Positions 32,010 through 53,706 of a DNA stretch of 64,000 nt are shown one piece after another. Location: IMG/VR virus record IMGVR_UViG_3300034104_003795, positions 1-64,000 of that record. The stretch is one strand, 5' to 3'. Position 1 is the stretch's first letter. Each line of letters opens with the position of its first letter. The notes beneath the pieces were generated by a model, which made no database searches, had not been told where the DNA came from, and worked only from the letters and a program-made list of their open reading frames with translations. The position numbers were made by a program, and so were the translations under genes.

Positions 32010-32017
32010 TAATAAAT

Positions 32018-32045
32018 GGGGAGAAGAAATTCTCCCCTTTATTTT
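32018..32045 (+). terminator. intrinsic terminator after TBDR
   Basis: GGGGAGAA-GAAA-TTCTCCCC-TTT. Confidence 0.85.
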
Positions 32046-32077
32046 GTCCTTTAAATAAATTTTCGTATATTTGTACA

Positions 32078-32617: not shown

Positions 32618-32768
32618 TATAATACATTTTATTAACTATCACAATTAAAGTTGTTTATCACAATGTGGATAGCTAGTATTACCATACCTTTTTATACGAT
32701 ATTTATTAAAACAAATTAGCGCTTGTTTTATTATTATGTTATTTTGATTAACTTAAACAAATAGAAAC

Positions 32769-32882
32769 ATGCAAACAATTGTAGATTTCGTATTCAATTT
32801 TCACTTCCTTGTAGGTGGATTAGTTGGATACTTCGCTGTTCCTTTCTTAGTAAAATTCGCTAAAGGATTCCTAAAGAAGTAA
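32769..32882 (+). CDS. 37-aa single-TM peptide (not in track)
   Basis: MQTIVDFVFNFHFLVGGLVGYFAVPFLVKFAKGFLKK; terminator at 32922-32957. Confidence 0.55.
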   Translation: MQTIVDFVFNFHFLVGGLVGYFAVPFLVKFAKGFLKK

Positions 32883-33076
32883 TAGTAAATTAAAAACAAA
32901 GTTGATATTAGCTAATCAAACAAACCCTCATAGAAATATGGGGGTTTTTTATTTTTTCATTATATATATTATTGAAACCTTGTGGTTAATCCTTTAGTGT
33001 TCTCCGAAACATTTGAGTTGAAAATAAAACCCTCAACGAATAAAGGCTTAAATAAACAAACAAAAACAAGAAAATT

Positions 33077-33865
33077 ATGTACAACATTACAAACACGTGG
33101 TCTGCTACAAAAAGACCAGAAGCCTTCATTACGAAAGGTAAAAAAAGAATCAAACAATTTGATGGACAAGTATATCTCTCCGATGGAGATGAATACGAAA
33201 TCGAATTATTCAATCCTACACAAGAAGTAGTATTAGCAAAAATTAAAATTGATGGAGATTATATTGCCGGTGGTGGTATAGTTCTTCGTAGGGGTGAAAG
33301 AGTATTTTTAGAACGATTCTTGGATTCACCAGAGAAGTTTAAATACTCAACCTATGTAGTTAATGGAAATAATACAGAGGTTCAGGATGCGATTGCAAAT
33401 AACGGATATGTAGAGATTGAATTCTATTCAGAATACAAACCAACTTGGAATAGTGGATTCCTAACAACAGGTACATTCAACCCCCAAACCATTAATGGAA
33501 ATCCAATAACATATACTACAACGGGTAATAGTGGAAATTTCACTTTAACATCAGGCAATACAACTAGTACATTCTATAATGCTAGTTTAACTTCTAATAC
33601 ATTAGCCGGTCCAAATATTAGAAACCTATCCAATAAGATAGAAACCGGTACAACTGAAAAGGGTAGTAGTTCAGACCAAACATTTCAACATACAAACAAA
33701 ACATTCAATTCGTTTTCGTTTTGGAATGTAGCTTGGCAAATTCTACCAACATCGCAAAAACAATATACGGCAGAAGAAGTAGGTGTAAACTATTGTGGAA
33801 ATTGTGGAGCTAAAAGAAAGAAATCATCTTTTAAATTCTGCCCGCACTGCGGAAATAAATTCTAA
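33077..33865 (+). CDS. hypothetical protein with Thr/Asn/Gly-rich linker and C-terminal Zn ribbon
   Basis: YCGNCG..FKFCPHCG. Confidence 0.7.
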   Translation: MYNITNTWSATKRPEAFITKGKKRIKQFDGQVYLSDGDEYEIELFNPTQEVVLAKIKIDGDYIAGGGIVLRRGERVFLERFLDSPEKFKYSTYVVNGNNTEVQDAIANNGYVEIEFYSEYKPTWNSGFLTTGTFNPQTINGNPITYTTTGNSGNFTLTSGNTTSTFYNASLTSNTLAGPNIRNLSNKIETGTTEKGSSSDQTFQHTNKTFNSFSFWNVAWQILPTSQKQYTAEEVGVNYCGNCGAKRKKSSFKFCPHCGNKF

Positions 33866-34885: not shown

Positions 34886-36760
34886 TTAAACTACATCTTT
34901 TTGTTTACGGTTGATATCTCTATCGGATAACTCTATGTTTGATACGGCACTAGAACCACCTTTTGCTCTTGCTTTATTATGTGCTCTATCTGTTTCTTCT
35001 GTAGACCCTAGCAGATTTACTAACTCGTCAAAATCGGATGAAACCAATTTAGAAACGGTTGGTAGTTCGGAGCATGATATAAATCCAATTTCGCAAAAAG
35101 GATGTTTAGATGTTTTCATATCAATCATAGTAGTTTGAAATGCATGTTCAATGTGTTTGTTAAATACATTAATAACACACGAGTGGTCATGTCCCCAAGT
35201 TAATAAATCACCAATAAAGTGTCTACCAAAAGACTTTTCAATATCTTTTGTTTCGTTTTTTTCACATTTCTTTTCAATATCTACCCAATCATTTTGGTAT
35301 TCTTTAGCCAAGTCTTTTGCAGAAAGAGGATGTGGTTTTGTTGTAAAATCAAAAGCTTTCTTACTTTTCCAAAATTCAATCTGGTCCTTACCATCTTCGG
35401 TTTGCCAATAATTAGTATTTTGTGGATGTGTTATTTTAGATTCTATAAAACATACCATAAGAATACTATGAATAAATTCATACATATTTGAATCTTTTAT
35501 ATCCAATTTCCACTTATCTCTTCCGTGAGAATATACATAATTGTTTCTATAATAATTCAAAGCAAACATACAATATATGAAAAAGGAAGCCTTCTCATAA
35601 GTTTTTTTGAATACTTTAGCGTTGGGTTGGGCATCAATATCTGATATAGCAGCCATAACTTTTACCATATCCGTAAGAAGTTTATCACCCCATTCTATTA
35701 TAAAAGGCGAATCATCTTTAAATAAGATTTTACAAATGTCTGATTTTGTTTTTACCTCAAATCTATTAATGGATTGTGGTTGAGCATAAATTGTAGCCAT
35801 TAGTACTCCTATAAAGTATTGCCAACCACCATCATTTCTCTTAAAAGTACCTTTAGAGATTGATAATGGACTTGTTTTAGTATAGAATAATTTCTCGTAT
35901 TTATTTAAATCATTTGTTCTCTCTGGCATCAAATTATCTCTAAACCAAGTAGAATATGCGGAAAATGATTGAATTGCTTCGAATGCAAAGTCATCCCATC
36001 CAGCCGATTGGTTACTTCGTTTAACGTATGTCATTATACTACTAAAATCATTTGAATCAACAATTTCAATTATACATAATTGACAAGATTCCAAATAACT
36101 TTGAAATATATTTTTTCTTTCATCGTAACTCAAATCTTTTGCAAAATCATATAATAACCACTCACCTGCGGAACAAAGTTTTGTTTTTAATTCATGCAAA
36201 CTCGTAACGGTTTCATTATAAACTTCACCATTAATTTCCGCCTTTAAATTAGAGTATTCAACTTGAGTTGTTTTTTTCTTATTTTTAGGTTCAAGATTTC
36301 CCAAATAATCTTGTTTTATAGAATCAAATCTATGTTGTCCATTGATTATGAAATACTGACCAGTTTTTTCAGTAAAGTAATTCAGATAAATTGTTAAACT
36401 AGCAATTACACTTTCGTATCTTTCAATCAAAACATTATTTTGCTTTGATTTTTTTGATTGTTCGTACTTTATATCTTCTCGTTTTTCATCAATCTGTCTT
36501 TTGATTATATTAACAACGGTTTCTGCTTTTATAATATAATACCCTGCGGAAGTACCATACCCAGTTGTTACTGATGCGCACATTCCCTTTTGTGTATCAA
36601 AATTCAACTCTCTCATTAAGCGATTTAGAGTTGGGTCATTGATGATTACATCAATATTATCAATTAATGATTTTAGAGAAGTTCCAAATATTCTAGTGAG
36701 AATATCTTTAGATGCTGTTATTTTTATAGCATCGTTTTCAAATAAAGGAGAATATATCAT
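34886..36760 (-). CDS. ParB/Srx-fold (xGQHR) plus C-terminal HNH protein, GmrSD/DndB-like architecture
   Basis: YFIINGQHRF; DRAHNKARAKGGSSAVSNIELSDRDINRKQK. Confidence 0.6.
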   Translation of the reverse strand: MIYSPLFENDAIKITASKDILTRIFGTSLKSLIDNIDVIINDPTLNRLMRELNFDTQKGMCASVTTGYGTSAGYYIIKAETVVNIIKRQIDEKREDIKYEQSKKSKQNNVLIERYESVIASLTIYLNYFTEKTGQYFIINGQHRFDSIKQDYLGNLEPKNKKKTTQVEYSNLKAEINGEVYNETVTSLHELKTKLCSAGEWLLYDFAKDLSYDERKNIFQSYLESCQLCIIEIVDSNDFSSIMTYVKRSNQSAGWDDFAFEAIQSFSAYSTWFRDNLMPERTNDLNKYEKLFYTKTSPLSISKGTFKRNDGGWQYFIGVLMATIYAQPQSINRFEVKTKSDICKILFKDDSPFIIEWGDKLLTDMVKVMAAISDIDAQPNAKVFKKTYEKASFFIYCMFALNYYRNNYVYSHGRDKWKLDIKDSNMYEFIHSILMVCFIESKITHPQNTNYWQTEDGKDQIEFWKSKKAFDFTTKPHPLSAKDLAKEYQNDWVDIEKKCEKNETKDIEKSFGRHFIGDLLTWGHDHSCVINVFNKHIEHAFQTTMIDMKTSKHPFCEIGFISCSELPTVSKLVSSDFDELVNLLGSTEETDRAHNKARAKGGSSAVSNIELSDRDINRKQKDVV

Positions 36761-36797: not shown

Positions 36798-36829
36798 CAA
36801 ATATACAACTATTTTTTCAGACCACCAAA
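36798..36829 (-). promoter_or_regulatory. Bacteroidota primary-sigma promoter
   Basis: TTTGG-N19-TATATTTG. Confidence 0.8.
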
Positions 36830-36835
36830 TCTTTT

Positions 36836-37342
36836 TTAATATTTTATTAGGGATACCACATTTTTACCACCGATTCGGATATCACCATGTAGGTAGGTTA
36901 AATCAATAAGGGTTACTGCTCCAATCACATTATACCCAGCTAACCTCAATAGTTCCTCTGCCGCAAGTAAAGTTCCGCCAGTAGCAAGAACATCATCTAC
37001 AATCACTATATCACCTTTACCTTCTTTAACCTCTAATATATCATGTCCATACTCTTTGGATGAATCTATTTTTATTGTAGGTGGTGGTAACTTACCTGCC
37101 TTACGAATAGGAACGAATCCTTTACTATCTACTCCTGCGATTGCGGAAGCAAATATAAATCCTCTTGCCTCTATTCCTGCAACTGAATGACAAGGAAAGT
37201 TTTCATCTATTAAAACTACCATTTCATCTATCGCAGATTGAAATGCTCTACCATCTGAAAGGAGTGGTGTTATATCCCTAAAAGTTACTCCGTCAATCGG
37301 AAATCCTTCTACATCGTTAATTAATCTTTTTAAATTTTCCAT
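36836..37342 (-). CDS. apt: adenine phosphoribosyltransferase
   Basis: FPIDGVTFRDITPLL, GIEARGFIF, VPIRKAGKLP, VIVDDVLATGGT. Confidence 0.93.
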   Translation of the reverse strand: MENLKRLINDVEGFPIDGVTFRDITPLLSDGRAFQSAIDEMVVLIDENFPCHSVAGIEARGFIFASAIAGVDSKGFVPIRKAGKLPPPTIKIDSSKEYGHDILEVKEGKGDIVIVDDVLATGGTLLAAEELLRLAGYNVIGAVTLIDLTYLHGDIRIGGKNVVSLIKY

Positions 37343-37343
37343 T

Positions 37344-37649
37344 TTATATTGTGTTTAAATAATGTACCAATGATTCGCCAAAAAGTTCCATATCATGTAA
37401 TGTTGCTTGATATACAACATCTTCTATAATATCTCCAGTAGAATCATTCATAAGTTTTATATCATAGGTAAGTTCACTCCATTCATCATTTAATAAACCT
37501 TGCCTAAATATAACCAATGTTATTGTTCGTTTACCATCTTTATGTCTGGCCTGCAAAGCATAATGTTCTTTACCCGCATCGGTTCTACCAATCTGCCAAT
37601 CACCATACCATTGGTTTTGTATCTTCTTAAAATTTTCTATTGTTAGCAT
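37344..37649 (-). CDS. MLTIxN-family paralogue A1
   Basis: MLTIENFKKI..W..HYAL..LVIFR. Confidence 0.7.
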   Translation of the reverse strand: MLTIENFKKIQNQWYGDWQIGRTDAGKEHYALQARHKDGKRTITLVIFRQGLLNDEWSELTYDIKLMNDSTGDIIEDVVYQATLHDMELFGESLVHYLNTI

Positions 37650-37651
37650 AA

Positions 37652-38122
37652 TTAAAAAGGTATTACTGGATGGTATTTATCAACTATTTCTTCTACCATT
37701 CCCCAAAAGTTTTTATAATTCAAATCATGCCCTCTAAACCAACCTCTATAATCCCATTCACCTTTATCATCGTTAATATACACTTGATACATCATTTCTG
37801 GATAATATGGTACAGGTGCAACTTGAAGTTCTCTACCCAAAGTAATATATACTCTCAATTTTTTATCTTCTCTATGTACAAGTTGAAATGTATATACTTC
37901 TTCCGATTCATCCGCAGATAGAATATCCCATCCCCAAAAAATCATCGTAGTAAGTTCTTTATCGTAATTTTGTATATGTAATTTTTTCTTTTTCATATTT
38001 GGTTCTTTTGGTGTAACTGTTACTATAACCTTTCCATAGTTTTTAGGATTGATTGGTTTACTATATCCCTTTCTAATAAGTTGGTTAGGTCTAAATCCAC
38101 CTTTTAATTTATTTATTCTCAT
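37652..38122 (-). CDS. MLTIxN-family paralogue A2 (family domain starts at Met 37996)
   Basis: LHIQNYDK..WDI..VYTF..ITLGR. Confidence 0.65.
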   Translation of the reverse strand: MRINKLKGGFRPNQLIRKGYSKPINPKNYGKVIVTVTPKEPNMKKKKLHIQNYDKELTTMIFWGWDILSADESEEVYTFQLVHREDKKLRVYITLGRELQVAPVPYYPEMMYQVYINDDKGEWDYRGWFRGHDLNYKNFWGMVEEIVDKYHPVIPF

Positions 38123-38123
38123 A

Positions 38124-38432
38124 TTACATTGATGCCTTTAAGCAACTACTAAACGTTCTCATCACATTTGTAAATTTTCCAAACCATTTCGCAGTTATAA
38201 TATGAATTGGACAATTAGGATAGTTTAATCGGTATTCCCATGCCTTCTCAATATCATTATAATGCCCAATCTTACTTACCTCAATCCAAATATAACGGTG
38301 TACACCGGAACTATCATCTCTGAATTGAAATCTATAATTTGTATCCGTTTCAATAGCCTCAGTACAAATAAATCTTTCTTTATGAAACATCGCTGTTACT
38401 ATCTTATCGTAATTTTGTATTATTAGTTTCAT
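38124..38432 (-). CDS. MLTIxN-family paralogue A3
   Basis: MKLIIQNYDK..NYRF..EYRL. Confidence 0.65.
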   Translation of the reverse strand: MKLIIQNYDKIVTAMFHKERFICTEAIETDTNYRFQFRDDSSGVHRYIWIEVSKIGHYNDIEKAWEYRLNYPNCPIHIITAKWFGKFTNVMRTFSSCLKASM

Positions 38433-38436
38433 TCAT

Positions 38437-38745
38437 CTATTTTTTATGTTCTGATTGAATATAACATTCCATCATCAACCAAAATTGCTCCTTATCTTTA
38501 AATTGAGAAAGTGGTAGTTGCCCTTTCCAAATTATATTCGTATAAGAACGATACATAACACTAACCTCAACTTTACCATTTTTAATTTCTCTCCCTAATT
38601 GTACCGCAGCATGTGTAGTATTACCATCAATACATTTCAATTTAAATGTATAATACTGATTGGTTTCTTGTGCAAAATATATTACCCAATTTTGTATTAG
38701 ATAATTCTTTAAATCTGCGTAATTACTAATATCTAACTTTTTCAT
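38437..38745 (-). CDS. MLTIxN-family paralogue A4
   Basis: LDISNY..WVI..YYTF..VQLGR. Confidence 0.65.
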   Translation of the reverse strand: MKKLDISNYADLKNYLIQNWVIYFAQETNQYYTFKLKCIDGNTTHAAVQLGREIKNGKVEVSVMYRSYTNIIWKGQLPLSQFKDKEQFWLMMECYIQSEHKK

Positions 38746-38753
38746 TTATTATA

Positions 38754-39056
38754 TTATCTTTGTAACCCACCCATTATTTCGGTGAATTTGTTCACTAAAT
38801 TATTTATATCTTTTATATAGTCAAGCGTTACCGCATATCCTATTGGTTTATCATCTAATGTAAATTTATATTCTCCACTACTTTCAGCAATTCTATTAAG
38901 AGATAATTTCCTTACATCATCTATTTTACCTGTTAAAGGGTTTTTTCTTAACAATACGAAGTGATACCAATTGTCAGTTTCACTAATACTATCCACCAAC
39001 CAATGTTTGTCAAACGCATATTGGTTTAATTTATTTACATTTAATATTGTTAGCAT
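38754..39056 (-). CDS. MLTIxN-family paralogue A5
   Basis: MLTILNVNKL..WLV..WYHF..LSLNR..EYKF. Confidence 0.7.
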   Translation of the reverse strand: MLTILNVNKLNQYAFDKHWLVDSISETDNWYHFVLLRKNPLTGKIDDVRKLSLNRIAESSGEYKFTLDDKPIGYAVTLDYIKDINNLVNKFTEIMGGLQR

Positions 39057-39057
39057 G

Positions 39058-39333
39058 TTATATTAATTCATCTATTAAAAATCTTACAAACTCATCTCTA
39101 TCTCCCATACACTCTATTGGTAGATAATGTTCTTTTTGTGTTTCTAAACAATAGACATGATAATCACCATGCTTTGTTTTCTTCCTATCAATACAAAGGT
39201 TAAACATATCAAAAGGTGAACCATTGTGTATTGTCTTTATATAGTAGATATCATCTCCTATTGACAAGTTATGTATCTTCCAATGGCCTATATACTTACC
39301 AGCCAATGTATTTATGTTTTGTATTGTTAGCAT
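39058..39333 (-). CDS. MLTIxN-family paralogue A6
   Basis: MLTIQNINTL..WKI..IYYI..LCIDR..DYHV. Confidence 0.7.
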   Translation of the reverse strand: MLTIQNINTLAGKYIGHWKIHNLSIGDDIYYIKTIHNGSPFDMFNLCIDRKKTKHGDYHVYCLETQKEHYLPIECMGDRDEFVRFLIDELI

Positions 39334-39334
39334 T

Positions 39335-39655
39335 TTATATCTTTTCTTTGTTCATTAAAATATATTCCAATTGGTTAATCATATTATCTTTATCGGCTAT
39401 GAAATCTGCGGTGACACATACATCGGTTCGTTTTGAATCAAATATGAAGAAGTACGATAAGTTAGGTGAACCAACACCTCTAATACCAGTTCTCTCCAAC
39501 ATAATCTTATGTCTTGTTGTGAATCCACTCCCATCCCAATCCTTAACCAATTCAAATATGTAAGTATCGGGTCTACCTTCATATATCAGTTGTATTGTCC
39601 AACCATCTGCCAAAGGTCTCCCTTCTAATTTCAATATGTTTTCTATTGTTAGCAT
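39335..39655 (-). CDS. MLTIxN-family paralogue A7
   Basis: MLTIENILKL..WTI..TYIF..IMLER. Confidence 0.7.
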   Translation of the reverse strand: MLTIENILKLEGRPLADGWTIQLIYEGRPDTYIFELVKDWDGSGFTTRHKIMLERTGIRGVGSPNLSYFFIFDSKRTDVCVTADFIADKDNMINQLEYILMNKEKI

Positions 39656-39656
39656 C

Positions 39657-40037
39657 TTAAATTAAATTTTGGTCTTTAGCCCATCTCATTATCACCTTGG
39701 TTGCGTACATTTCTAAATTGTTTTGGAATAGTTTCATATCCTTTATTTGTGATATCTTTAACCAATCATCACTATCCATTAAATTATTTTCCATTTGGTA
39801 TATTCCTTTTTCATCCGGCGTTCTACGAAGATAGATACAAAGTGGTACATCATAATCCGAAACGGCTTTATATTCAAATCGGTATGATTCATCCGTCTCA
39901 CCTGTTACTGCAGTTACATCACCGGGAAACTCAATAACTCGCTCACACTCCCATTCTAATAATTCAGAAGGGACGTACAAGTTTTGAAGTTTTATTTTAG
40001 TACCTACTAATTTTTCTATGTTCTTTATTGTTATCAT
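39657..40037 (-). CDS. MLTIxN-family paralogue A8
   Basis: MITIKNIEKL..WEC..SYRF..IYLRR..IYQM. Confidence 0.7.
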   Translation of the reverse strand: MITIKNIEKLVGTKIKLQNLYVPSELLEWECERVIEFPGDVTAVTGETDESYRFEYKAVSDYDVPLCIYLRRTPDEKGIYQMENNLMDSDDWLKISQIKDMKLFQNNLEMYATKVIMRWAKDQNLI

Positions 40038-40405
40038 CCGAATACTAAATTTTTAATATCATCATATTGTTTAATACTAGCACCATTCAAACTATTTTTT
40101 ACAATATACACACCAAACCTTCTCAACGAGCCCATCATTACTCTTTTAGAATTAAAGGAATTTGACCTAACTCTTAAAGGATACGCCATATCTTTGGAAT
40201 GATTAACTAAATAACAACCCCAACCCAATTCTTTTGGATGGGCTGAACTTCTCATAATGATAAGATAACAAATGTGGTTCTCTATACCATCGTTGTACAT
40301 AAACTCAATAGCATACAAATCTCTTTGAGCAACACAATATATTACCGATATCTTATCATCGGTCCATCCACCTAACTTTTCAACACCATCAATAGTTAAT
40401 CTCAT
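40034..40405 (-). CDS. MLTIxN-family paralogue A9 (divergent)
   Basis: MRLTIDGVEKL..LYAI..LIIMR. Confidence 0.6.
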   Translation of the reverse strand: MRLTIDGVEKLGGWTDDKISVIYCVAQRDLYAIEFMYNDGIENHICYLIIMRSSAHPKELGWGCYLVNHSKDMAYPLRVRSNSFNSKRVMMGSLRRFGVYIVKNSLNGASIKQYDDIKNLVFG

Positions 40406-40414
40406 ATTATACGT

Positions 40415-40507
40415 TTAGCAGGATATCAATAACATTAATAAGAGTATAAGCAAATACACTCCTAACATTTTCATTGTAGTCCAATCGTTTTTCTTTTTAG
40501 TTTTCAT
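40415..40507 (-). CDS. 30-aa peptide that is essentially a lipoprotein signal ending at the lipobox Cys
   Basis: MKTKKKNDWTTMKMLGVYLLILLLMLLISC-stop. Confidence 0.4.
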   Translation of the reverse strand: MKTKKKNDWTTMKMLGVYLLILLLMLLISC

Positions 40508-40856
40508 CCCAATACTTTTTACCTTTACGAACAACCTCATGCATACAAGCGATGAAGTATCCAAATTTCTTTATATCATCTACATCCAAATACTCAATCG
40601 TTACACCATGCAATCCCATCCAAAACAATTCGTACTTACCAGATACGTTTGGGTTTCGGTAAAGATAAATTTTGAAACTATCTTCCCATTGTTTATATGG
40701 ATTATTGGTTTTGGTGATGAAAGGTATTGCCGGAAAATGGAATACATACGCACTCCCATTAACTATCTCACCTTTCTCTACCGTTATCTTTTCAATAGTA
40801 CGATTGTGGAAATGGTGACCGGTAAGTTTGTTGATACCTTCTATGTTTAAGACCAT
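40497..40856 (-). CDS. MLTIxN-family paralogue A10
   Basis: MVLNIEGINKL..AYVF..IYLYR..KYEL. Confidence 0.65.
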   Translation of the reverse strand: MVLNIEGINKLTGHHFHNRTIEKITVEKGEIVNGSAYVFHFPAIPFITKTNNPYKQWEDSFKIYLYRNPNVSGKYELFWMGLHGVTIEYLDVDDIKKFGYFIACMHEVVRKGKKYWDEN

Positions 40857-41967
40857 ATACCTTTCAGTTTTAAAAAGTTAAGGAATGAAGATTTCGGAGA
40901 TACAGTCGAAAAATCATATTGGTCGTTGAGGTAATTTGCTTTGATAGTACTTTCCGGGTCTACATACGATTGAGAAACCTTCAACTCCGCCTTCCATTGT
41001 TGGTATTGAGGATTTAGCATAGTAGTTGTTCTTTCGTTTTCCAAGACCTCATACGCTTGGACATCATTGTAGTTGTTATAAGTTGTACTCATAATAAGGG
41101 TTTTATAATATAAATTAATCTAAATAGTTATCAAATAGTAGGTATATCGTCCATACTACACCGAATACCAATACACCTGCTATAAAGGCAATGGAAACCG
41201 GTGGTATTAATAGGAATACCTTAAATGGCCGTTCCTTTAACCATCTCTTATCAGTATCGGAGAATATAAATTGAATACCTAATGCTGATAGGAAGTTTAA
41301 TAGGAATAGGATAAGGAATAGTAATACCATTATTTCTTTGATTTAGTACGTTTAGTAGAAGCGGGTTTAGTTTCTTCTACAATCCCTGTGTTATCTGATG
41401 CCGTAGGGATTGTATCATCTATAAACTGACCACCATACGGAAAGAATTGTTTCCCACTAATACTGATGGAATGGATACGTCCAACTTTTCCTTTGATATG
41501 TGATTCGGATGGGTTTTCGGAATAGTACACACCATCTACTAACATCTTACCTTCTCTAACTTTAAAACTTTTCATAATCTTTAATTTTTGTTTTTATAAT
41601 GAATAATTGTTTATACTAAATAATTTTGTTGAACGAACTTTAAGATATTGGTTCTATCCTTACCCGATACACCTTTGAATGATTTGAACGAATAGATATC
41701 ATCCGCCCAATACTTTGTCATAGTGTTGGTATGTGTAGGACGTACCTCAAAGAAACGTACAAAGAAGTAATTGGGTTCACCACCGAATTCACTTTTGATA
41801 CTAATAGGTACATATACTACCTCGCAACTATCCGAAGGAATCTTTGTTACTTCATCTAACCATATATCAATAGGTTTAGAGAAATGTGAAAACCTCTCTA
41901 TCTCATTGTAGAACCTTTTCCAAGTACTCTTACTTAACTTAATTGAATCTACATACTTCATAGCCAT
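40847..41967 (-). CDS. four small hypothetical CDSs (40847-41092; 41115-41330 two-TM; 41330-41575; 41611-41967)
   Basis: Packed ORFs with AT-rich initiation regions. Confidence 0.55.
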
Positions 41968-41986
41968 AATCTTAATTTTTATTTTA

Positions 41987-42310
41987 TTACTTTGTGTTTA
42001 ATGCGGGTTTGTGTTTCTTAACCAATTCCATCTCTCTAATGTGAGCGGCCTCTTTACCTCTTACTACATCTAATACCGATACTTCATATACCAATTCTAA
42101 ATCATCAATGTAGTTGAACATATCCATATACAATTTCCAATCCCAATTTTCCCTTCTCGCTCTACTAAAATGTTTTTGTAACCGAACCTTTGCGGAACGA
42201 AGGAACGCCCGACCGGTTGAAGCCGTAATACCAATATATTCGTTACCATTGAAGGTATTTGTAATAAGGTATATAATATGATTCCTATCTGTACGTTTCT
42301 TCCTACTCAT
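41987..42310 (-). CDS. GIY-YIG endonuclease-family protein (start MSRKKRTDRNH)
   Basis: HIIYLITNTFNGNEYIGIT..RLQKH..REMELV..LNT; promoter at 42332-42363. Confidence 0.8.
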   Translation of the reverse strand: MSRKKRTDRNHIIYLITNTFNGNEYIGITASTGRAFLRSAKVRLQKHFSRARRENWDWKLYMDMFNYIDDLELVYEVSVLDVVRGKEAAHIREMELVKKHKPALNTK

Positions 42311-43098
42311 ATCTAACTTAACTTTTATACCTAAAATTACGAAAATTAATTGAGACCACCAAATTCTACCTAAAAGTTCTCGATTGGAAATCAACCCTTT
42401 ATAGATATATTTTAACCCCATACATAAGTCATTGACCGTCAACCAAGTATATATTAACCCCTTTCCGTTCCATTTTAACCCTATGAACCCCTAAACCATA
42501 CCTTTACCCTACCCATCCAAAATAACCCCAAGAAACCCCCTCGAAATGATTCATATATACGGCTATACTGTACAACCCACTGGTACCCCAATCCTAACCT
42601 ATTGATTGTCAATGAGTTATAACCAATTGATAATGAAGGGGTTATATATAGGGAATATCCACCATACCAATAAGGACGGATACAATAAAGACAGGTACAA
42701 TAGTAATAAAGACTATATACCATTAGGGGTAATATATAAAAATCTCGTATAGCGAAAAACTTGGGCTCGATACGAGAAGGGGTTAGGGGGCCCTCTAATA
42801 AAAAAATATTTTCTACGGTTCCAAGAAATTCAGTCCCCTACAGTCCCTATGGCGCCTACGTTCCAGAGGATTGGTATGCATGTATATATGTGTGTCCTCT
42901 ACAATCCTTATGGCGCCTACGTTGCGTGAGATTGTGTTTTTGATTGAAGTAAAATCTTTTTTGTTAAGGTAGTCCGTCCATGTGGGTAAGTTATAGACAC
43001 AAGAAAGGGGACCCGATTCCCAGTCAGTCCCCTCAGTCAACTTGCTCATTTAATAAACGTCAAATCACCAAACACTCCTCATTCAAGAGGATAATATT

Positions 43099-44282
43099 TT
43101 ATTTATTCATATAGTCCAATCCTATGTAGATATCGAACCATTGATTTATAACTCTATACTTTAGCCCCATTCCTTTACTATCATAATCTGTATAATCAGG
43201 TCCAGCTACCGCCTTCACTTCATTATATAGTGCTTCCGCATCTTCTTTGTGTATGGCACATAGGGCGTGTATTTTTGCTTTAATACTAGCTTCGTGTCTC
43301 ATACCTACTTCCCATACCGAGTGGCTATCTGACATCATATAGGACCAATCATGCTCATTCACTAACTGCATTAGGTCACTTCTCATTGTATTACTTATAC
43401 TCATATACTTAATTTTTTATAATAAATAAAATGTTACTGTCTCAGCTTTCCGCCAGGGTATATCATTTTGGGTACCGGGTCTATATGCATTACCCAGCAC
43501 AGCCTTTCGGTTACTATGTCTACCACGTGGACGGACACGGCCACCACCACAGGTTGCAGATAGTAACTTCTTTATAGATAATATCTGGATTTCGGACTCA
43601 AACTTTACAGTCAATAATTTTTCACTCATTGTATAAGGGGTTTATGAATTAATAAGAATAAGCCTTTGTACTAGCTTCTTCCATCTCTGCCAAATAGGCT
43701 TTACCATTGGCTGTACCCCAATATGATTTAGGGATACTATTATCGTATGGATTTGTACGCACAATACGTTCAATCACTTCCGCTTCCAACTCATTCGAGC
43801 GTAGAAAACCATTCACCAATTTTTCCATAAGGTCAGAACGTGTCTCACGTCTGTCCAACTTATTGTATGCGGCCAAGGCCATAACTAATGTTTTCAACTC
43901 TTTATTTGAGAAAGCCGATACTAACAGGTCACAATTTTGATTATACATATAGATAATTTAAGGGGTTTAAAAATTACTTCAAAAGGTATTTAGAACACAT
44001 ACCGAAACCAGCAGACTGTAAGTCCGATTTGATTTCCTTATGGAACTTTTTAGGGAACTTACCCATTGAAACCGGATACTCTCTCAAGATTGAATTGATC
44101 TTGGTTGTTTCAGATTTGAAAAGGGAAAGGAACTCTCTAGCCTCATTGAAGGCTTTACGAGTCTTACATTGGATACGGTGGGTATTACCCAAGAAGTCAG
44201 TATATTCTACTGATACGTTAAAACGGGGGTTTTCACTCATTTTAGAGGCTGAGAAACTCTTAAAGGGATTTTGCGTATTCAT
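43099..44282 (-). CDS. four small early hypothetical CDSs (43099-43404; 43417-43629; 43649-43948; 43974-44282)
   Basis: Downstream of host-type promoter 44306-44337. Confidence 0.55.
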
Positions 44283-44305
44283 ATCTTATCATTTTTATTA
44301 CATAA

Positions 44306-44640
44306 TAAAGATAGGGGTATTTTCCGAGCTGGCCAAACTTTTTGGGACTTATTTTAAAAATTCTTGCTTGAGAATCAATGACTTATGTAAGGGGTTGAAT
44401 ATCAATGACTTATAAAACGTTGGTTTTCAATGAGTTACGATTCAGTATAGATTAGGGGTATTTCACCCAGCCCCTACACAGATTCCAGAAGACCTGTCCA
44501 GAAAATGTGGATAACTTGATAAAAAACGGGTAAAACTACACAGAAAAATGTTCAAAATATAATATGTAGCATGTTAGTGTGTTAATTAGTATATTAACCC
44601 CACCAGTCCATCTGGGCCCAGGTCCCGCGGGACTTGTGGT
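44306..44640. promoter_or_regulatory. non-coding control region: promoter, three dyads, DnaA-box match, GC palindromes
   Basis: Dyads 44361-44437; TGTGGATAA 44506-44514; CTGGGCCCAG and GTCCCGCGGGAC 44612-44633. Confidence 0.55.
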
Positions 44641-44684
44641 ACTTTGGGAACATCAGCGAGGTACATTGGGTACATTAGGGACAT

Positions 44685-44709
44685 AAAAAAACCGGTCACA
44701 TCGGACCGG
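44685..44709 (-). terminator. intrinsic terminator
   Basis: CCGGTC-ACATCG-GACCGG with A7. Confidence 0.7.
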
Positions 44710-44734
44710 CTAATTATTTACTAACCTATCTTAA

Positions 44735-44908
44735 TTACTTAACGATAGTAGTAGTATCAGCTGCTACTGGAGCTACAGTTGAATCCACAGCTACTGCTGT
44801 TGTATCTACTGCTACTGCTGTTGAATCAGTAGTTACTTCTGTTGAAGTTGAACCACCACAAGCTACCAATGATGTAGCGATTACGAAAATTGCGATTACT
44901 TTTTTCAT
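44735..44908 (-). CDS. 57-aa Bacteroidota-type Thr/Ala/Val-rich lipoprotein (not in track)
   Basis: MKKVIAIFVIATSLVA-CGGSTSTEVTTDSTAVAVDTTAVAVDSTVAPVAADTTTIVK. Confidence 0.75.
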   Translation of the reverse strand: MKKVIAIFVIATSLVACGGSTSTEVTTDSTAVAVDTTAVAVDSTVAPVAADTTTIVK

Positions 44909-44976
44909 CTTTGTTGTTTTTATATTTGTTTTATTGTTTACCCATTAAAATAACAGGTATAAGTATTGGTTGTCTT

Positions 44977-45015
44977 AAAAAATTGGGACCGGCTAAATAG
45001 GTATCTGCCGGTCCC
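44977..45015 (-). terminator. intrinsic terminator
   Basis: GGGACCGGC..GCCGGTCCC. Confidence 0.7.
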
Positions 45016-45036
45016 TAATAAATTTATCAGTTAAGA

Positions 45037-45231
45037 TTAACCAACCCACTCATTACGAAGAGTCTTCGCTTTCTTTAATGAAGTCTCATATTGAGAATAA
45101 GTGATACCATCTTCGGTAACTCTCACGCGATAAGATACAGTACCAGATGGACGTGTAATCTTTTGAATGTTGTTAGAAACTGTTTCGTACATGTTTCCAC
45201 GCTTTGCTGCTTTTTTTGACTTATTAGCCAT
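45037..45231 (-). CDS. small basic protein, possibly AP2/integrase-N-like DNA-binding fold
   Basis: IQKITRPSGTVSYRVRV..KAKTLRNE; own promoter at 45329-45360. Confidence 0.5.
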   Translation of the reverse strand: MANKSKKAAKRGNMYETVSNNIQKITRPSGTVSYRVRVTEDGITYSQYETSLKKAKTLRNEWVG

Positions 45232-45532
45232 AGTTTTGAACGGTTGACCTCTTACACCGCTAGGTTTAGTTTATTTCGGTCCAACTTATTAATAGGGGTG
45301 GTCCTTACCCTTTATCTTTATAGAATATCAAAGATACGAAATATTTCTGATACTTCCAAATTTATTTTTTCCTTACGTTCAAGGTCAGCAATAACCCTAT
45401 CTACCATTGCTTCTGTTATTTGGGGTGATGCCATGCTCATATCTTTCATTAACTCTTGCATCGCTTCCCACTTGTCACCTTCAACTTCTATACAAATATA
45501 CGAATAATTTCCCATACTACCAAATTTATTTT

Positions 45533-45790
45533 TTAGGATGTAAAATACAACTCACCATTGTTGCTATATACCCTATCCACACTATTTTCTACAATAGTAA
45601 CCAAGTTACCCTTGCGTAACCCTTCGGAATAGAATTTAGCATACTGGTCAGTAGATTGCTCTAATACTTCAATAAACGGTCCAGCATCTATTGTACGGCA
45701 CCCAACAATCGGGGTATGTGTAAATGCAATGCGGACTTGGGGAAAGTCACTTAACAGTTGACGATAATAACCTTTTGGCGGTAAATTCAT
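45533..45790 (-). CDS. hypothetical protein
   Basis: ORF in early operon. Confidence 0.5.
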   Translation of the reverse strand: MNLPPKGYYRQLLSDFPQVRIAFTHTPIVGCRTIDAGPFIEVLEQSTDQYAKFYSEGLRKGNLVTIVENSVDRVYSNNGELYFTS

Positions 45791-45801
45791 ATTATTTGTT
45801 T

Positions 45802-46269: not shown

Positions 46270-46297
46270 ATCTTATTAAATTAAAGGGGTTATTAAA

Positions 46298-47143: not shown

Positions 47144-47162
47144 ATCTCTTAATCTTATATAC

Positions 47163-47949: not shown

Positions 47950-48013
47950 GGCACGATTTGATGCCACTTGCTCACCTGGTTTGACATGAGTATTTTTATG
48001 AGTCTTTTTTTCT

Positions 48014-50198: not shown

Positions 50199-50525
50199 TT
50201 ATTGATTTACTATATTTTTTATATGAGTGTCCAAGCAAAAAGTAAAACTACTTATGGTCCTCATATACTCTATATCCCATGCCGAACGTCCATGAAAGCT
50301 TTGTTTTACTAGTCCGGTCTCCATTACATACCCACCTATTGTTTTTACTCTATTCAATTTTATAGTCAACTCATCACGCCTAAAACCCCCGATTGTCCAA
50401 TAACCTACCCGTTTATGGATTACAAATATATAGTTTTGTTCACCTATAAACATTTCACCTATCCGCCATTCGGGTGTACCGGCAAACTTACTATTGAGTA
50501 TGTTTATGTTTTCTATTGTTAGCAT
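50199..50525 (-). CDS. MLTIxN-family paralogue B1
   Basis: MLTIENINIL..WRI..NYIF..IKLNR..GYVM. Confidence 0.7.
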   Translation of the reverse strand: MLTIENINILNSKFAGTPEWRIGEMFIGEQNYIFVIHKRVGYWTIGGFRRDELTIKLNRVKTIGGYVMETGLVKQSFHGRSAWDIEYMRTISSFTFCLDTHIKNIVNQ

Positions 50526-50526
50526 A

Positions 50527-50835
50527 CTATTCTTTTAACATTTTATCAATTAAGTTTCCTATAAAATACGGCGTTATTTGATGCATACTCAACCATCTAT
50601 TTACTTTACTTTGGTCAAAATCTTTATATAACCTATAAACGGGTTCGTTTCTGCCACTTACATATTGGCTCTCTCTATTCAAATAAAATACATTTTGTAC
50701 CTTACCGTTTACAGAAACAGCAAATGCATATACATCCTTATAAACATCGGTTGTTTCTATCGCTTCACTTATATACCATATGTTAATAGATGAACCCACA
50801 TTTATTATTTTATCTATGTTTTGTATTGTTAGCAT
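50527..50835 (-). CDS. MLTIxN-family paralogue B2
   Basis: MLTIQNIDKI..WYI..VYAF..FYLNR..VYRL. Confidence 0.7.
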   Translation of the reverse strand: MLTIQNIDKIINVGSSINIWYISEAIETTDVYKDVYAFAVSVNGKVQNVFYLNRESQYVSGRNEPVYRLYKDFDQSKVNRWLSMHQITPYFIGNLIDKMLKE

Positions 50836-51152
50836 AGTATATATTTGTTTACTAAAAATTCTATTGAGCTTACAAACTGTCTCATGTCCGATATATCCTT
50901 TGTTCTTAAATATATTCTACTCGTAGGATTACTATTATCATACATCGCGTAGGTTGTTTCCATATTAGGACCAAATACGTCCGAAGTTCTAAGTAAAACT
51001 AATAACTCGTCAGATTTTGATTTACGCGGACATCTTAAATGTATTTGATATGCTCTTTCATATTGAGTAGTATTTCTTATATAATATTCTACAACACGAT
51101 TCTTAACTATTGGTACATCTAATATCTTATATGTATTTTCTATTGTTAGCAT
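50829..51152 (-). CDS. MLTIxN-family paralogue B3 (start reassigned to 51152)
   Basis: MLTIENTYKI..AYQI..VLLR..TYAM. Confidence 0.7.
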   Translation of the reverse strand: MLTIENTYKILDVPIVKNRVVEYYIRNTTQYERAYQIHLRCPRKSKSDELLVLLRTSDVFGPNMETTYAMYDNSNPTSRIYLRTKDISDMRQFVSSIEFLVNKYILC

Positions 51153-51162
51153 ATTATTTGTT

Positions 51163-51486
51163 TTAATTACTGAAACTATGCAATTGACCACCCAATATAC
51201 CAACAAACATTTTCAATTGTAAGTAACCTTTTGTTAGTATTGTATAACCATTATCTTGGTCATTATACATTTTCCACTCACCTAACGTACTACTAAATTC
51301 ATTATATCTTAATAGTTTAAAGTTTACATACTTTGGATGCTTTACGCCAAATGTAGTACCATACTCAAATCTTACTTTAATAATATAATCATGCTTTTGT
51401 TCCTCTATACTCATTACTACCCAATGTGCATGTGGTGTATGTATTTTTTTTCCTACTATCTTTTGTATGTTTTTTATTTTTAGCAT
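51163..51486 (-). CDS. MLTIxN-family paralogue B4
   Basis: MLKIKNIQKI..WVV..DYII..FKLLR. Confidence 0.7.
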   Translation of the reverse strand: MLKIKNIQKIVGKKIHTPHAHWVVMSIEEQKHDYIIKVRFEYGTTFGVKHPKYVNFKLLRYNEFSSTLGEWKMYNDQDNGYTILTKGYLQLKMFVGILGGQLHSFSN

Positions 51487-51496
51487 ATATTATTTT

Positions 51497-51820
51497 TTAT
51501 ATATCGTATGAGGTATCAATCATTTCAGTCATTCGTTTTATCAATAACCTCTTATCACTTATAGTTTCAATTGGTATGTATGTTTTAATCTTATACATTC
51601 TTTGCATACCCGGCCCACCTGCTGATATTCCAAATTCATATCCAATTCCATGTAGGTTTTGTTTATTCAAAGCAAATATTTCTTTTGGGCCTTTTCTATT
51701 TTCAATTAAGATTAGGTATTCATCGGTGTCATCTATAATTTTGTCCACTACCCAATACATACCCATCTTATCATAAAACGAATCACTTATTAACCGTCCT
51801 CTATTTTCTATTGTGAGCAT
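51497..51820 (-). CDS. MLTIxN-family paralogue B5
   Basis: MLTIENRGRL..WVV..EYLI..FALNK..GYEF. Confidence 0.7.
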   Translation of the reverse strand: MLTIENRGRLISDSFYDKMGMYWVVDKIIDDTDEYLILIENRKGPKEIFALNKQNLHGIGYEFGISAGGPGMQRMYKIKTYIPIETISDKRLLIKRMTEMIDTSYDI

Positions 51821-52127
51821 ATATCATTCCAGTTTGTATGTGTAACTCTAATATGAAGTTTTTCATTGTAAGGTTTTCCGGCGTTACATAAACATTTTGT
51901 TTTAGTTTTGCCGATGTCATTTCATATCCCCTACTATTCCTTATAGTTCGCATCAATTTATATACAATACCATCGTTTATACTTGCCACATTGTTTTCCA
52001 TCAAAGGAAATACCCCAAAACTATAATGGTCATAATATGCTCTTGCGATACCAATTATAAACTTCCGTCCGCTACTCAATTGGAATTCCTTACCGTCTAT
52101 ATTTTGTATGTTTTCTATTGTCAACAT
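51801..52127 (-). CDS. MLTIxN-family paralogue B6
   Basis: MLTIENIQNI..HYSF..YKLMR..GYEM. Confidence 0.7.
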   Translation of the reverse strand: MLTIENIQNIDGKEFQLSSGRKFIIGIARAYYDHYSFGVFPLMENNVASINDGIVYKLMRTIRNSRGYEMTSAKLKQNVYVTPENLTMKNFILELHIQTGMIYAHNRK

Positions 52128-52735: not shown

Positions 52736-53044
52736 TTATTTTAAAGATTCTAACATATCTTTTATCAAATCAGTCACATATACAGTGCCTAACTTCAAAT
52801 CCGGTTTATTTAATATCCTTCTAATTGGTATTCCACTTCCCGATTGATTAGACCAAAACCATAATTCATAAAGTGCCGAATCACTCTTACCTATTGCGGT
52901 TCGTTCTAAATTAACTTGCAATCGTAGGCCATTGGATTTTCTTAATTCAATTAGGTATGCACTATCCAATGTTACTACTTTACCTATTCTCCATTCACCT
53001 ACATCCTGTTTGTAAAGTTTTTCTATGTTTACTATTGTTAGCAT
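52736..53044 (-). CDS. MLTIxN-family paralogue B7
   Basis: MLTIVNIEKL..WRI..AYLI..VNLER..LYEL. Confidence 0.7.
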   Translation of the reverse strand: MLTIVNIEKLYKQDVGEWRIGKVVTLDSAYLIELRKSNGLRLQVNLERTAIGKSDSALYELWFWSNQSGSGIPIRRILNKPDLKLGTVYVTDLIKDMLESLK

Positions 53045-53045
53045 A

Positions 53046-53342
53046 CTAAATAAATGATTCTAAATGATTACTGAATATATCAATATTTTTCATATCGTCT
53101 CTGTGTATATACTTTTTTTCATTTCCACATTCTAATTTGTATTGGTGTCCAAGTTTAAACGGTGAAAAACTTCTGTCCAAAACTATTTTCTTGTCCCAAC
53201 CATTTTCAGTTTGCTCAATAAAAATTACATAGTGATTCAAATGTGGTCTTATTGAAGTTACAACCCATTCCATTGGACCGGCACTTCCGCTACCATGCAA
53301 TATAGTACCTAATAACTTTTTTTCGTTTTCTATTGTTAGCAT
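53046..53342 (-). CDS. MLTIxN-family paralogue B8
   Basis: MLTIENEKKL..WVV..HYVI..IVLDR..QYKL. Confidence 0.7.
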   Translation of the reverse strand: MLTIENEKKLLGTILHGSGSAGPMEWVVTSIRPHLNHYVIFIEQTENGWDKKIVLDRSFSPFKLGHQYKLECGNEKKYIHRDDMKNIDIFSNHLESFI

Positions 53343-53343
53343 C

Positions 53344-53706
53344 TTAATAAGTGTTTGGTAGCATATATCTTAATACATCAATAAATTTATCCATTGTGTC
53401 TATATCGGTACAATATCCACGTTGTACTTGTCCATAACAAAACAATTCATATGTATTTTCATGTTGAACTCTATAAAAACTTAACTTAGCTTCCTCAATT
53501 CTTGCACGAGTCATAGAATAGTATTGCTGATTAGGTGAACTTATAACAGGCACTTGCGTTTGGAATTGAAATACATATGTAATTTCGTCATCCATCGTTA
53601 CATTGACGTTTGTTACACACCAAATCAAATTACCGGTTGCACTTGGTATAATTGTTTTTAATAACTTTTCAGGATTTTTTAATATCATTTTATTTGTTAT
53701 TATCAT
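53344..53706 (-). CDS. MLTIxN-family paralogue B9 (divergent)
   Basis: MILKNPEKL..WCV..TYVF..LSFYR..TYEL. Confidence 0.6.
   Translation of the reverse strand: MIITNKMILKNPEKLLKTIIPSATGNLIWCVTNVNVTMDDEITYVFQFQTQVPVISSPNQQYYSMTRARIEEAKLSFYRVQHENTYELFCYGQVQRGYCTDIDTMDKFIDVLRYMLPNTY

What the first reader, a model, noticed from the sequence alone, without database searches (positions are those of the whole stretch)
37344..40856. Array A: ten tandem hypervariable ~100-aa paralogues on one conserved scaffold (MLTIxN family)
Seen: ten back-to-back genes, mostly a few bases apart or slightly overlapping, look unrelated at first but align by eye on one pattern. It runs M-L-T-I-x-N-(I)-x-K-(L), W-x-(I/V), Y-x-(F/I), (I/L)-x-L-x-R, Y-x-(L/M/F), then a C-terminal amphipathic helix (IKDINNLVNKF, IADKDNMINQL, IKDMKLFQNNL). 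Loops between these anchors vary freely in length and sequence. I do not recognise the family. Inference: a repertoire of single-domain binders with a fixed beta-sheet fold and variable loops, expressed from host-type promoters. Each may target a different host factor or defence protein, so this could be an expanded anti-defence or host-takeover toolkit. It is the strongest candidate for an undescribed system in the window.
Basis: partly seen in the sequence, partly recalled or inferred. Interest (0 to 1): 0.9.

Follow-up and report, generated by a model that had tools for sequence, protein, structure and literature searches.

The report
Phage gene arrays of small paralogues
A 274-kb phage of Bacteroidota carries at least 19 back-to-back genes for one undescribed family of ~100-residue proteins with a fixed core and a free surface; they are good candidates for host-targeting or anti-defence proteins, but their function has not been tested.

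Summary
Ten co-directional ORFs fill 37344-40856 on the minus strand. Nine more lie at 50199-53706.

- **Family:** leave-one-out HMMs recover 17 of the 19 at E 1e-5 to 1e-14. The other two score about 1e-4 and 1e-3 to 0.2. No shuffled decoy matched.
- **Known relatives:** none in Pfam, PHROGs, NCBIfam, PADLOC, PDB sequences or 50,697 GenBank phage records.
- **Spread:** 444 clusters at 50% identity in metagenomes. Related large-phage contigs carry arrays of up to 16 genes.
- **Fold:** AlphaFold2 gives a short N-terminal helix, a five-strand antiparallel sheet and a C-terminal helix (pLDDT 93.6). Foldseek finds no match. Conserved residues lie on one sheet face, the helix and the N-terminal MLTIxNxxKL.
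- **Evolution:** related phages differ by whole-gene gains and losses at gene junctions. Orthologues are 70-100% identical with dN/dS 0-0.46, so these are old paralogues, not a mutating locus.
- **New here:** the first 12 bases (ATGCTAACAATA) are conserved at synonymous sites. Avoiding the GTTAAC restriction site explains part of this.

Function is inferred only. Diversified binders of host proteins is my best reading (0.45). No promoter lies at or inside the arrays.

The parts
40497..40856 (-). Array A gene 1 in transcription order (119 aa, MVLNIEGINKL)
   Evidence: ORF. Leave-one-out HMM E 1.6e-5. 97% identical orthologue in L001.
40415..40474 (-). 19-codon hydrophobic mini-ORF in the only real gap of array A
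   Evidence: Identical in L001; L006 has a similar hydrophobic mini-ORF at the same place. Coding status is not shown.
40034..40405 (-). Array A gene 2 (123 aa, MRLTIDGVEKL), the most divergent member
   Evidence: Leave-one-out E 6e-4 to 0.2; E 1.3e-7 against the 150-sequence profile, which includes it. The AF2 model has the family topology plus an extra C-terminal helix, pLDDT 79.5.
39657..40037 (-). Array A gene 3 (126 aa, MITIKNIEKL)
   Evidence: Leave-one-out E 9e-12. Its start overlaps the stop of the gene before it by 4 nt.
39335..39655 (-). Array A gene 4 (106 aa, MLTIENILKL)
   Evidence: Leave-one-out E 2.8e-12. Orthologue 76% identical, dN/dS 0.46. L001 has two extra family genes inserted just upstream.
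39058..39333 (-). Array A gene 5 (91 aa, MLTIQNINTL)
   Evidence: Leave-one-out E 2.3e-12. 100% identical in L001.
38754..39056 (-). Array A gene 6 (100 aa, MLTILNVNKL), the member modelled first
   Evidence: Leave-one-out E 2.1e-14. AF2 pLDDT 93.6, pTM 0.84.
38437..38745 (-). Array A gene 7 (102 aa, MKKLDISNY)
   Evidence: Leave-one-out E 1.4e-11. Orthologue 70% identical, dN/dS 0.36.
38124..38432 (-). Array A gene 8 (102 aa, MKLIIQNYDK)
   Evidence: Leave-one-out E 1.1e-7. 100% identical in L001.
37652..38122 (-). Array A gene 9 (156-aa ORF; the family domain is residues 43-153; the true start may be Met43 at 37996)
   Evidence: The L001 orthologue has the same ORF length. N-terminal extensions in other phages are unrelated in sequence.
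37344..37649 (-). Array A gene 10 (101 aa, MLTIENFKKI), followed 1 nt later by a phosphoribosyltransferase gene
   Evidence: Leave-one-out E 3.9e-12. 80 orthologues at 66-95% identity, variable mainly at residues 50-82. The neighbour matches PF00156.
50199..52127 (-). Array B, lower block: six family genes (50199-50525, 50527-50835, 50829-51152, 51163-51486, 51497-51820, 51801-52127)
52736..53706 (-). Array B, upper block: three family genes (52736-53044, 53046-53342, 53344-53706)
   Evidence: Two non-family ORFs (52090-52287, 52297-52605) separate the two blocks.
42332..42363 (-). Nearest Bacteroidota-type promoter-like site upstream of array A (TTTGG, 20 nt, TAATTTTA), just before ATG 42310 of a GIY-YIG gene
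   Evidence: (repeat family D6). It is a consensus match only.

Best explanation
Arrays A and B encode a phage-specific multigene family of small, soluble, single-domain cytoplasmic proteins.

Shown:
- Every member keeps the same hydrophobic core: one face of a five-strand antiparallel sheet, the C-terminal helix that packs on it, and the N-terminal MLTIxNxxKL segment.
- The other sheet face and four loops differ completely between paralogues.
- Each paralogue is kept as its own orthologue group under purifying selection.
- The arrays gain and lose whole genes at gene junctions.

Inferred:
- Each paralogue uses its own surface to bind a different partner, most plausibly host proteins such as defence or other takeover targets.
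- The genes are read as long polycistronic, translationally coupled transcripts from distant upstream promoters.
- The repertoire is reshuffled between co-infecting phages by recombination anchored in the conserved 5' ends.
For: - **Family is real and large:** (444 clusters at 50% identity, all about 90-156 aa and matched over nearly their whole length).
- **Fold:** searches give the same order of elements in two distant members.
- **Core and surface map:**. Conserved positions alternate along the strands (19, 21 / 31, 33, 35 / 51, 53 / 63, 65 / 76) and line one side of the helix (81, 87, 91, 95). The intervening positions have entropy of 3.5-4 bits. Insertions cluster after residues 15, 39-45, 60 and 67.
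- **No enzyme-like features:** no known domain and no signal peptide or membrane segment visible in the sequences. pI ranges from 4.7 to 9.6.
- **Paralogue-specific conservation:** orthologues are 45-87% identical in distant phages, against 24-41% over partial lengths for the nearest paralogue in the same genome.
- **Selection and mosaicism:** dN/dS 0-0.46. dS jumps from 0.06 to 0.49 between adjacent genes.
- **Cassette turnover:** indels fall exactly at gene junctions, and divergent blocks begin 70-120 nt inside genes.
- **Phage-only distribution:** 23 of 27 viral matches to the start motif are family arrays. None of 64 matches in bacterial or archaeal genomes is.
- **Setting:** an accessory and nucleotide-metabolism region with heavy restriction-site avoidance, so host defence pressure on this phage is real.
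Against: - No binding partner, expression data, virion data or informative domain fusion exists.
- dN/dS never exceeds 1.
- The conserved polar residues N6, K9 and R55 could mark one shared site or ligand, which would point to a common activity and not to many different targets.
- The second model was built from an alignment of the whole family, so it leans towards the family fold.
- Recombination breakpoints were judged from only one pair of phages.
Confidence: 0.45

Rival explanations
1. The members are internal or ejected virion proteins. The near-invariant N-terminal MLTIxNxxKL acts as a targeting signal that loads them into the capsid, as in T4 internal proteins or the paralogous inner-body proteins of phiKZ. 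The variable bodies then act in the newly infected cell.
For: The N-terminus is the most conserved part of the family, and it sits at residue 1 to 3 in about 90% of members. Polymorphic loci of injected proteins are known in T-even phages (my own knowledge).
Against: The rest of the protein also shares one fold, unlike T4 internal proteins. Position 5 is Glu in only 27% of members, so there is no T4-type L/I-x-E cleavage site. L2, I4 and L10 are hydrophobic and are modelled with pLDDT about 91, as expected for core packing. No structural genes were recognised near the arrays. Some members place the motif behind a 35-45-residue extension.
Confidence: 0.1
2. All paralogues share one activity through the conserved N6/K9/R55 residues and the N-terminal segment, for example docking to one phage or host machine or binding a nucleic acid or nucleotide. 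The variable surface only tunes specificity, so they act as regulators or adaptors and not as independent inhibitors.
For: Three polar residues are 81-94% conserved across 150 diverse sequences. The position of the N-terminal motif is constrained.
Against: No nucleic-acid-binding or enzyme family is detected. pI varies widely.
Confidence: 0.17
3. The members are immunity-like antidotes to polymorphic toxins. These could be abortive-infection toxins, toxins of competing phages, or toxins the phage itself carries. Like strings of T7SS immunity genes, a phage would collect many variants.
For: The layout matches strings of non-identical esaG and tsaI immunity paralogues that evolve by recombination between tandem copies (abstract of bioRxiv 10.1101/2022.01.07.475358 = PMC9484751, listed). 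The variable large gene downstream (624 aa here, an unrelated 545 aa in L001) could in principle be a partner.
Against: No toxin domain is found in the flanks. The family was not found in bacterial genomes. The variable large gene has its own promoter and is separated from the array by a phosphoribosyltransferase gene.
Confidence: 0.1
4. The family is a largely neutral or selfish cassette family. The copies persist because the conserved 5' ends drive unequal crossing-over and exchange, not because each copy has a host target.
For: Whole cassettes are gained and lost at junctions, the 5' ends are conserved and the blocks are mosaic. A GIY-YIG homing-type nuclease gene lies 1.1 kb upstream.
Against: Reading frames stay intact. 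dN/dS is 0-0.46. Orthologue groups are kept at 45-87% identity across distant phages. The fold is confidently predicted in divergent copies.
Confidence: 0.08

Closest known systems
Strings of T7SS immunity paralogues (esaG, tsaI) in Firmicutes
   Same: Tandem, non-identical small paralogues. Copy number varies between strains. They evolve by recombination between neighbouring copies (abstract of PMC9484751, listed).
   Different: They are bacterial, not phage genes, and they sit next to known toxins. The family here matches no library model of any kind and was not found in bacterial genomes.
T4-type internal proteins and hyperplastic accessory loci
   Same: Phage-encoded and polymorphic between related phages. 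The extreme N-terminus is conserved, and at least one member has an anti-restriction role (my own knowledge of T4 IPI*).
   Different: T4 internal proteins share only the targeting peptide, which ends in a protease site. Here the whole domain is homologous and no such cleavage motif exists.
Multigene families of large eukaryotic DNA viruses (poxvirus ankyrin/PRANC proteins, ASFV MGF families, 'genomic accordions')
   Same: Tandem expansions of host-interaction genes in variable genome regions of large viruses, with copy-number differences between strains (my own knowledge; an analogy only).
   Different: The hosts, folds and scale differ, and there is no sequence or structural relation.
S. aureus lpl tandem paralogue cluster
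   Same: The unit of exchange spans the 3' part of one gene, the junction and the 5' part of the next gene (abstract of PMC2568036, listed). This resembles the block structure seen.
   Different: Those are bacterial lipoproteins of an unrelated family.
Small sheet-plus-helix phage inhibitors such as AcrIF1
   Same: Size and general design: an exposed antiparallel sheet backed by a helix (recalled from memory, so a lead and not a test).
   Different: Foldseek against PDB finds nothing better than E 0.23 and TM 0.42 for either model.

Membership tests
Any curated protein family (Pfam-A, PHROGs v4, NCBIfam, PADLOC) | A significant HMM match, or consistent weak matches across members | tested here: not met
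   The ten members scanned singly gave nothing below E 0.0025 and nothing near any curated cut-off. Among 150 members scanned, no family was matched by more than 2.
Any solved structure or viral predicted fold | Foldseek E below 1e-3 or TM above 0.5 | tested here: not met
   PDB best E 0.23 with TM at most 0.42. BFVD best E 0.056 with TM at most 0.46 over the listed matches. Second model best E 1.4. A PDB sequence-profile search gave only noise.
Diversity-generating retroelement targets | A near-identical template/variable repeat pair | tested here: not met
   No long direct repeats in 36800-54000. The top repeat family is the roughly 40-nt gene-start motif. Paralogues are about 20% identical.
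Diversity-generating retroelement targets | A reverse transcriptase gene close to the variable genes | not tested
   No dedicated search for a reverse transcriptase was made. The Pfam scans of the immediate neighbours show none.
T4-type internal proteins (capsid-targeting sequence) | A conserved N-terminal peptide that ends in a prohead-protease site (L/I-x-E) | tested here: not met
   The N-terminus is conserved, but position 5 is K 36%, E 27% or other residues.
T4-type internal proteins (capsid-targeting sequence) | The body of the protein is unrelated between members | tested here: not met
   The whole domain aligns and folds alike in two distant members.
T4-type internal proteins (capsid-targeting sequence) | Presence in virions | not testable with these tools
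   No isolate or proteome exists. There is no match in GenBank phage records.
Polyimmunity arrays of polymorphic toxin systems | A linked cognate toxin gene | tested here: not met
   No toxin domain in the flanking genes.
Polyimmunity arrays of polymorphic toxin systems | Homologues present in bacterial genomes | tested here: inconclusive
   None of 64 start-motif matches in 185,579 species genomes encodes a member. This test finds only genes that carry the exact motif.
Anti-CRISPR-type loci | Small genes followed by a conserved helix-turn-helix regulator (Aca) | tested here: not met
   The array neighbours are a phosphoribosyltransferase, a SnoaL-like protein, a GIY-YIG nuclease and unknowns. 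No HTH family was detected.
Catalogued anti-defence proteins | Homology to an experimentally shown anti-defence family | not testable with these tools
   No anti-defence library was available. PADLOC holds defence proteins only.

The most novel reading that the evidence does not exclude
The family is a modular adaptor system. The invariant N-terminal MLTIxNxxKL (with N6, K9 and R55) docks every member onto one common machine, for example a protease, unfoldase, or packaging or export apparatus. A ClpS gene lies near the array in a related phage. The paralogue-specific sheet face would select a different host protein for each member. That would make it a phage counterpart of poxvirus substrate-adaptor families. 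Its repertoire would be reshuffled as cassettes by recombination at the conserved gene-start sequence.
Probability: 0.1. Interest if true: 0.9.

Novelty: new variant of a known kind. Interest (0 to 1): 0.62.

Why it matters
Most genes of large phages have no known function, and much anti-defence discovery starts from small, variable accessory genes.

- This is a sharply defined family with no known relative in sequence or predicted fold.
- It reaches at least 19 copies in 64 kb, and up to 16 in one 8-kb stretch of a related contig.
- It has clear orthologue groups and presence/absence variation between related phages.

That gives a ready panel of natural variants on one scaffold to test against Bacteroidota defence systems, a phylum in which phage-host conflict is little studied. 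If the members are binders, the scaffold may also be useful for protein engineering. The cassette-like turnover and the conserved gene-start sequence give a tractable case of how phage gene repertoires are rebuilt.

Tried and rejected
- **DNA search of the region against GenBank phages:** no match. tblastn with three members also found nothing.
- **Scan of viral contigs with the 19-member alignment:** I used one member and the DNA start motif instead.
- **Two further candidates (61847-62209 and 62206-62547, N-termini MIVGIEKIKG and MVKKIENFEKL):** they look similar by eye, but the profile does not hit them.
- **Sigma-70 promoter scan:** uninformative, 36 sites against 39 expected. I replaced it with the Bacteroidota motif.
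- **Phage tRNA-Leu for the rare CTA codon:** there are no tRNA genes and no Rfam families in the window.
- **The 624-aa downstream gene as a nuclease or toxin partner:** I suspected this from motifs seen by eye, but Pfam, PADLOC and PDB sequences give no support.
- **Fusion partners and long members (216, 147-157 aa):** no known domain. The N-terminal extensions are unrelated to each other, and some may be ORF-calling artefacts.
- **Literature searches for a described equivalent in jumbo phages:** none found. The 'moraphage' paper (PMC12619734) describes aquatic large phages of Bacteroidota, but its text contains none of the words paralog, tandem, multi-copy or duplicat. Whether this phage belongs to that lineage was not tested.
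Full report
**1. What is there**

The window is the first 64 kb of a 273,997-bp viral contig, IMGVR_UViG_3300034104_003795. It is 31% G+C, and nearly all genes lie on the minus strand.

From 40856 down to 37344 there are ten ORFs of 91-156 codons. They are separated by 1-8 nt, apart from one 4-nt overlap and one 91-nt gap. A phosphoribosyltransferase gene follows 1 nt later (PF00156). A second run of nine related ORFs lies at 53706-50199, interrupted by two unrelated ORFs.

**2. Is the family real?**

Pairwise BLAST links only some members. An HMM iterated from four seeds recruits 17 ORFs and matches none of 2360 shuffled decoys.

In leave-one-out runs every one of the 17 is recovered at E 1.6e-5 to 2.1e-14. 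The two best non-members are always 53344-53706 (E 6e-6 to 2e-3) and 40034-40405 (E 6e-4 to 0.2). Both sit inside the arrays.

The second of these is the weakest member of array A, so I modelled it separately. AlphaFold2 gives it the family topology. That alignment contained the whole family, so the model leans towards the family fold.

**3. Relatives**

- A profile of the 19 members finds 414 proteins in the 90%-identity collection. All of the best 120 listed lack a Pfam domain, and sources call them 'hypothetical' apart from one stray enzyme label.
- It finds 444 clusters among 1.84 billion 50%-identity representatives. The best 150 are 67-156 aa, and nearly all are matched over almost their whole length.
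- Nothing turns up in Pfam, PHROGs, NCBIfam, PADLOC or PDB sequences, whether members are scanned singly or 150 at a time.
- Three members give no tblastn match in 50,697 GenBank phage records.
- The exact 18-nt start motif occurs in 27 stretches of IMG/VR, and 23 of them hold family arrays of up to 16 genes. It occurs in 64 stretches of bacterial and archaeal genomes, and none of those encodes a member.

Related contigs reach 275 kb. They share a helicase, an AAA_28 protein and a TonB-receptor-like outer-membrane protein with the window.

The host is inferred to be Bacteroidota from four observations:
- The helicase is closest to those of Bacteroides and Cellulophaga phages.
- The TTTG-N17-21-TAnnTTTG promoter motif is enriched, 16 found against 4.5 expected.
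- Start sites lack a Shine-Dalgarno sequence but have A at -3 in 69% of cases, as described for Flavobacterium (PMC6847099).
- The outer-membrane protein and the signal peptides are of the Bacteroidota type.

**4. Fold and conservation**

With a 150-sequence alignment, AlphaFold2 models 38754-39056 at pLDDT 93.6 and pTM 0.84. The elements are helix 7-10, strands 19-26, 30-38, 45-54, 62-67 and 70-77, and helices 78-81 and 84-98.

Foldseek finds nothing significant in PDB (best E 0.23) or BFVD (best E 0.056), and no listed match exceeds TM 0.46.

Conserved positions alternate along the strands and line one side of the C-terminal helix. The other sheet face is close to maximal entropy, and insertions cluster in four loops. 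The N-terminal block (L2, I4, N6, K9, L10) is the most conserved part.

There is no visible signal peptide, membrane segment or cysteine pattern, and pI runs from 4.7 to 9.6.

**5. How the arrays evolve**

I compared the window with an 89.5-kb relative (L001).
- Flanking genes are mostly 93-100% identical, apart from a few divergent genes. Array members are 100, 100, 99, 97, 97, 91, 85, 78, 76 and 70% identical.
- dS jumps from 0.06 to 0.49 between adjacent genes, which marks a recombination mosaic. dN/dS is 0-0.46 in the array and 0.02-0.20 in the flanks.
- L001 has 13 members plus one non-member where the window has 10. All indels are whole genes inserted exactly at junctions. Divergent blocks start 70-120 nt inside a gene, so the 5' ends stay identical.
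- Among 80 orthologues of 37344-37649, variation concentrates at residues 50-82.
- Most window members have full-length orthologues at 45-87% identity in distant phages, well above their nearest paralogue in the same genome.

The paralogues are therefore old, and each is maintained on its own. What differs between phages is which ones are present. There are no long repeats, so a retroelement-type diversifier is unlikely.

**6.

The genes begin ATG CTA ACA ATA. In 51 non-redundant members from unbiased loci:

| Codon | At this position | Elsewhere in the same genes | Fisher p |
|---|---|---|---|
| CTA (Leu2) | 25/34 | 61/438 | 2e-13 |
| ACA (Thr3) | 23/27 | 96/294 | 1e-7 |
| ATA (Ile4) | 29/33 | 256/453 | 2e-4 |

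Part of this is restriction-site avoidance. The window holds one GTTAAC against 17 expected, and no CTATAG against 10 expected.

ATG-TTA-ACN would create GTTAAC. TTA at codon 2 is 0/95 when residue 3 is Thr and 12/34 when it is not.

The preference for CTA over TTG and CTT (78, 7 and 7 of those 95) remains unexplained. It could reflect gene conversion at the 5' ends, a translational signal or a recombination anchor. Shared ancestry inflates these counts.

**7. Expression**

No Bacteroidota-type promoter lies in or directly before either array. The nearest candidate for array A is at 42332-42363, before a GIY-YIG gene that more likely starts at 42310.

The tight spacing suggests polycistronic, coupled translation. 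That is an inference.

**8. Interpretation**

The data fit a fixed scaffold that presents paralogue-specific surfaces. The family is confined to phages and sits in an accessory region of a genome under clear host-defence pressure. I rate diversified binders of host proteins at 0.45.

The rivals are injected virion proteins, a shared-site adaptor or regulator, immunity-like antidotes and selfish cassettes. None is excluded. No tool here could show a partner, timing or location.

**9. Novelty**

The protein family and its predicted fold have no described relative, and the arrays are unusually large. Tandem multigene families in the accessory regions of large viruses are a known kind of thing, so I class this as a new variant of a known kind. 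Interest is moderately high.

Noticed in passing
window, family gene starts (e.g. 37638-37649, 39644-39655, 50514-50525); also L007, L008, L012-L037: The first 12-18 nt of family genes (ATGCTAACAATAnnnAAC) are conserved at synonymous sites. CTA supplies 74% of Leu2 codons against 14% of the other Leu codons in the same genes. The 12-mer occurs 9 times in the window, only at family gene starts.
   Followed up: partly
whole window; the single GTTAAC is at 29394: Several 6-bp palindromes are strongly avoided: GTTAAC 1 seen against 17 expected, CTATAG 0 against 10, CTTAAG 1 against 10, GTATAC 2 against 17, TACGTA 0 against 7, and none of the GATC-containing palindromes counted (AGATCT, TGATCA). 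The only GTTAAC lies in the plus-strand outer-membrane-protein gene, which may be a recent acquisition.
   Followed up: partly
window 13551, 13579, 17845, 20798, 36798, 45329, 45493, 48409, 59118 (minus strand); 28521, 32043 (plus strand): A long, nearly identical promoter-like element (TTTGG ... CGTATATTTG) recurs. It fits the Bacteroidota -33/-7 consensus and is enriched 16 against 4.5 expected.
   Followed up: partly
window 40415-40474 (minus strand): A 19-codon hydrophobic mini-ORF lies in the only gap of array A. The gap is almost identical in L001 (two differences near its 3' end), more conserved than the two flanking genes. L006 has a comparable hydrophobic mini-ORF at the same place.
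   Followed up: partly
window 28749-33865 (plus strand): An island on the opposite strand encodes a 1086-aa TonB-dependent-receptor-like outer-membrane protein and an AAA_28 protein. Both are conserved in every related phage contig examined. Phage-encoded receptors of this kind are reported in a 2026 preprint (10.64898/2026.10.24.761521).
   Followed up: partly
window 34886-36760 (minus strand) against L001 13292-14929: The 624-aa gene downstream of array A has its own promoter. In the otherwise 93-100% identical relative it is replaced by an unrelated 545-aa gene. Neither matches any library.
   Followed up: partly
L007 3508-4976; L008 13493-15105 and 17489-17779: In more distant phages the arrays lie next to a polynucleotide-kinase-like gene and a T4 Rnl1-type RNA ligase, a tRNA-repair pair. 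A ClpS homologue lies a few kb away.
   Followed up: no
window 42833-42934 and 47277-47410: There are short direct repeats (41 nt twice, 61 nt apart; 26-29 nt pairs) in stretches with higher G+C and only implausible ORFs. These may be non-coding elements. No Rfam family matched.
   Followed up: no
window 6611-7348 and 7348-11318 (minus strand): Two further paralogue pairs have signal-peptide-like N-termini: 123 and 117 aa at 31% identity, and 762 and 560 aa at 25% identity.
   Followed up: no
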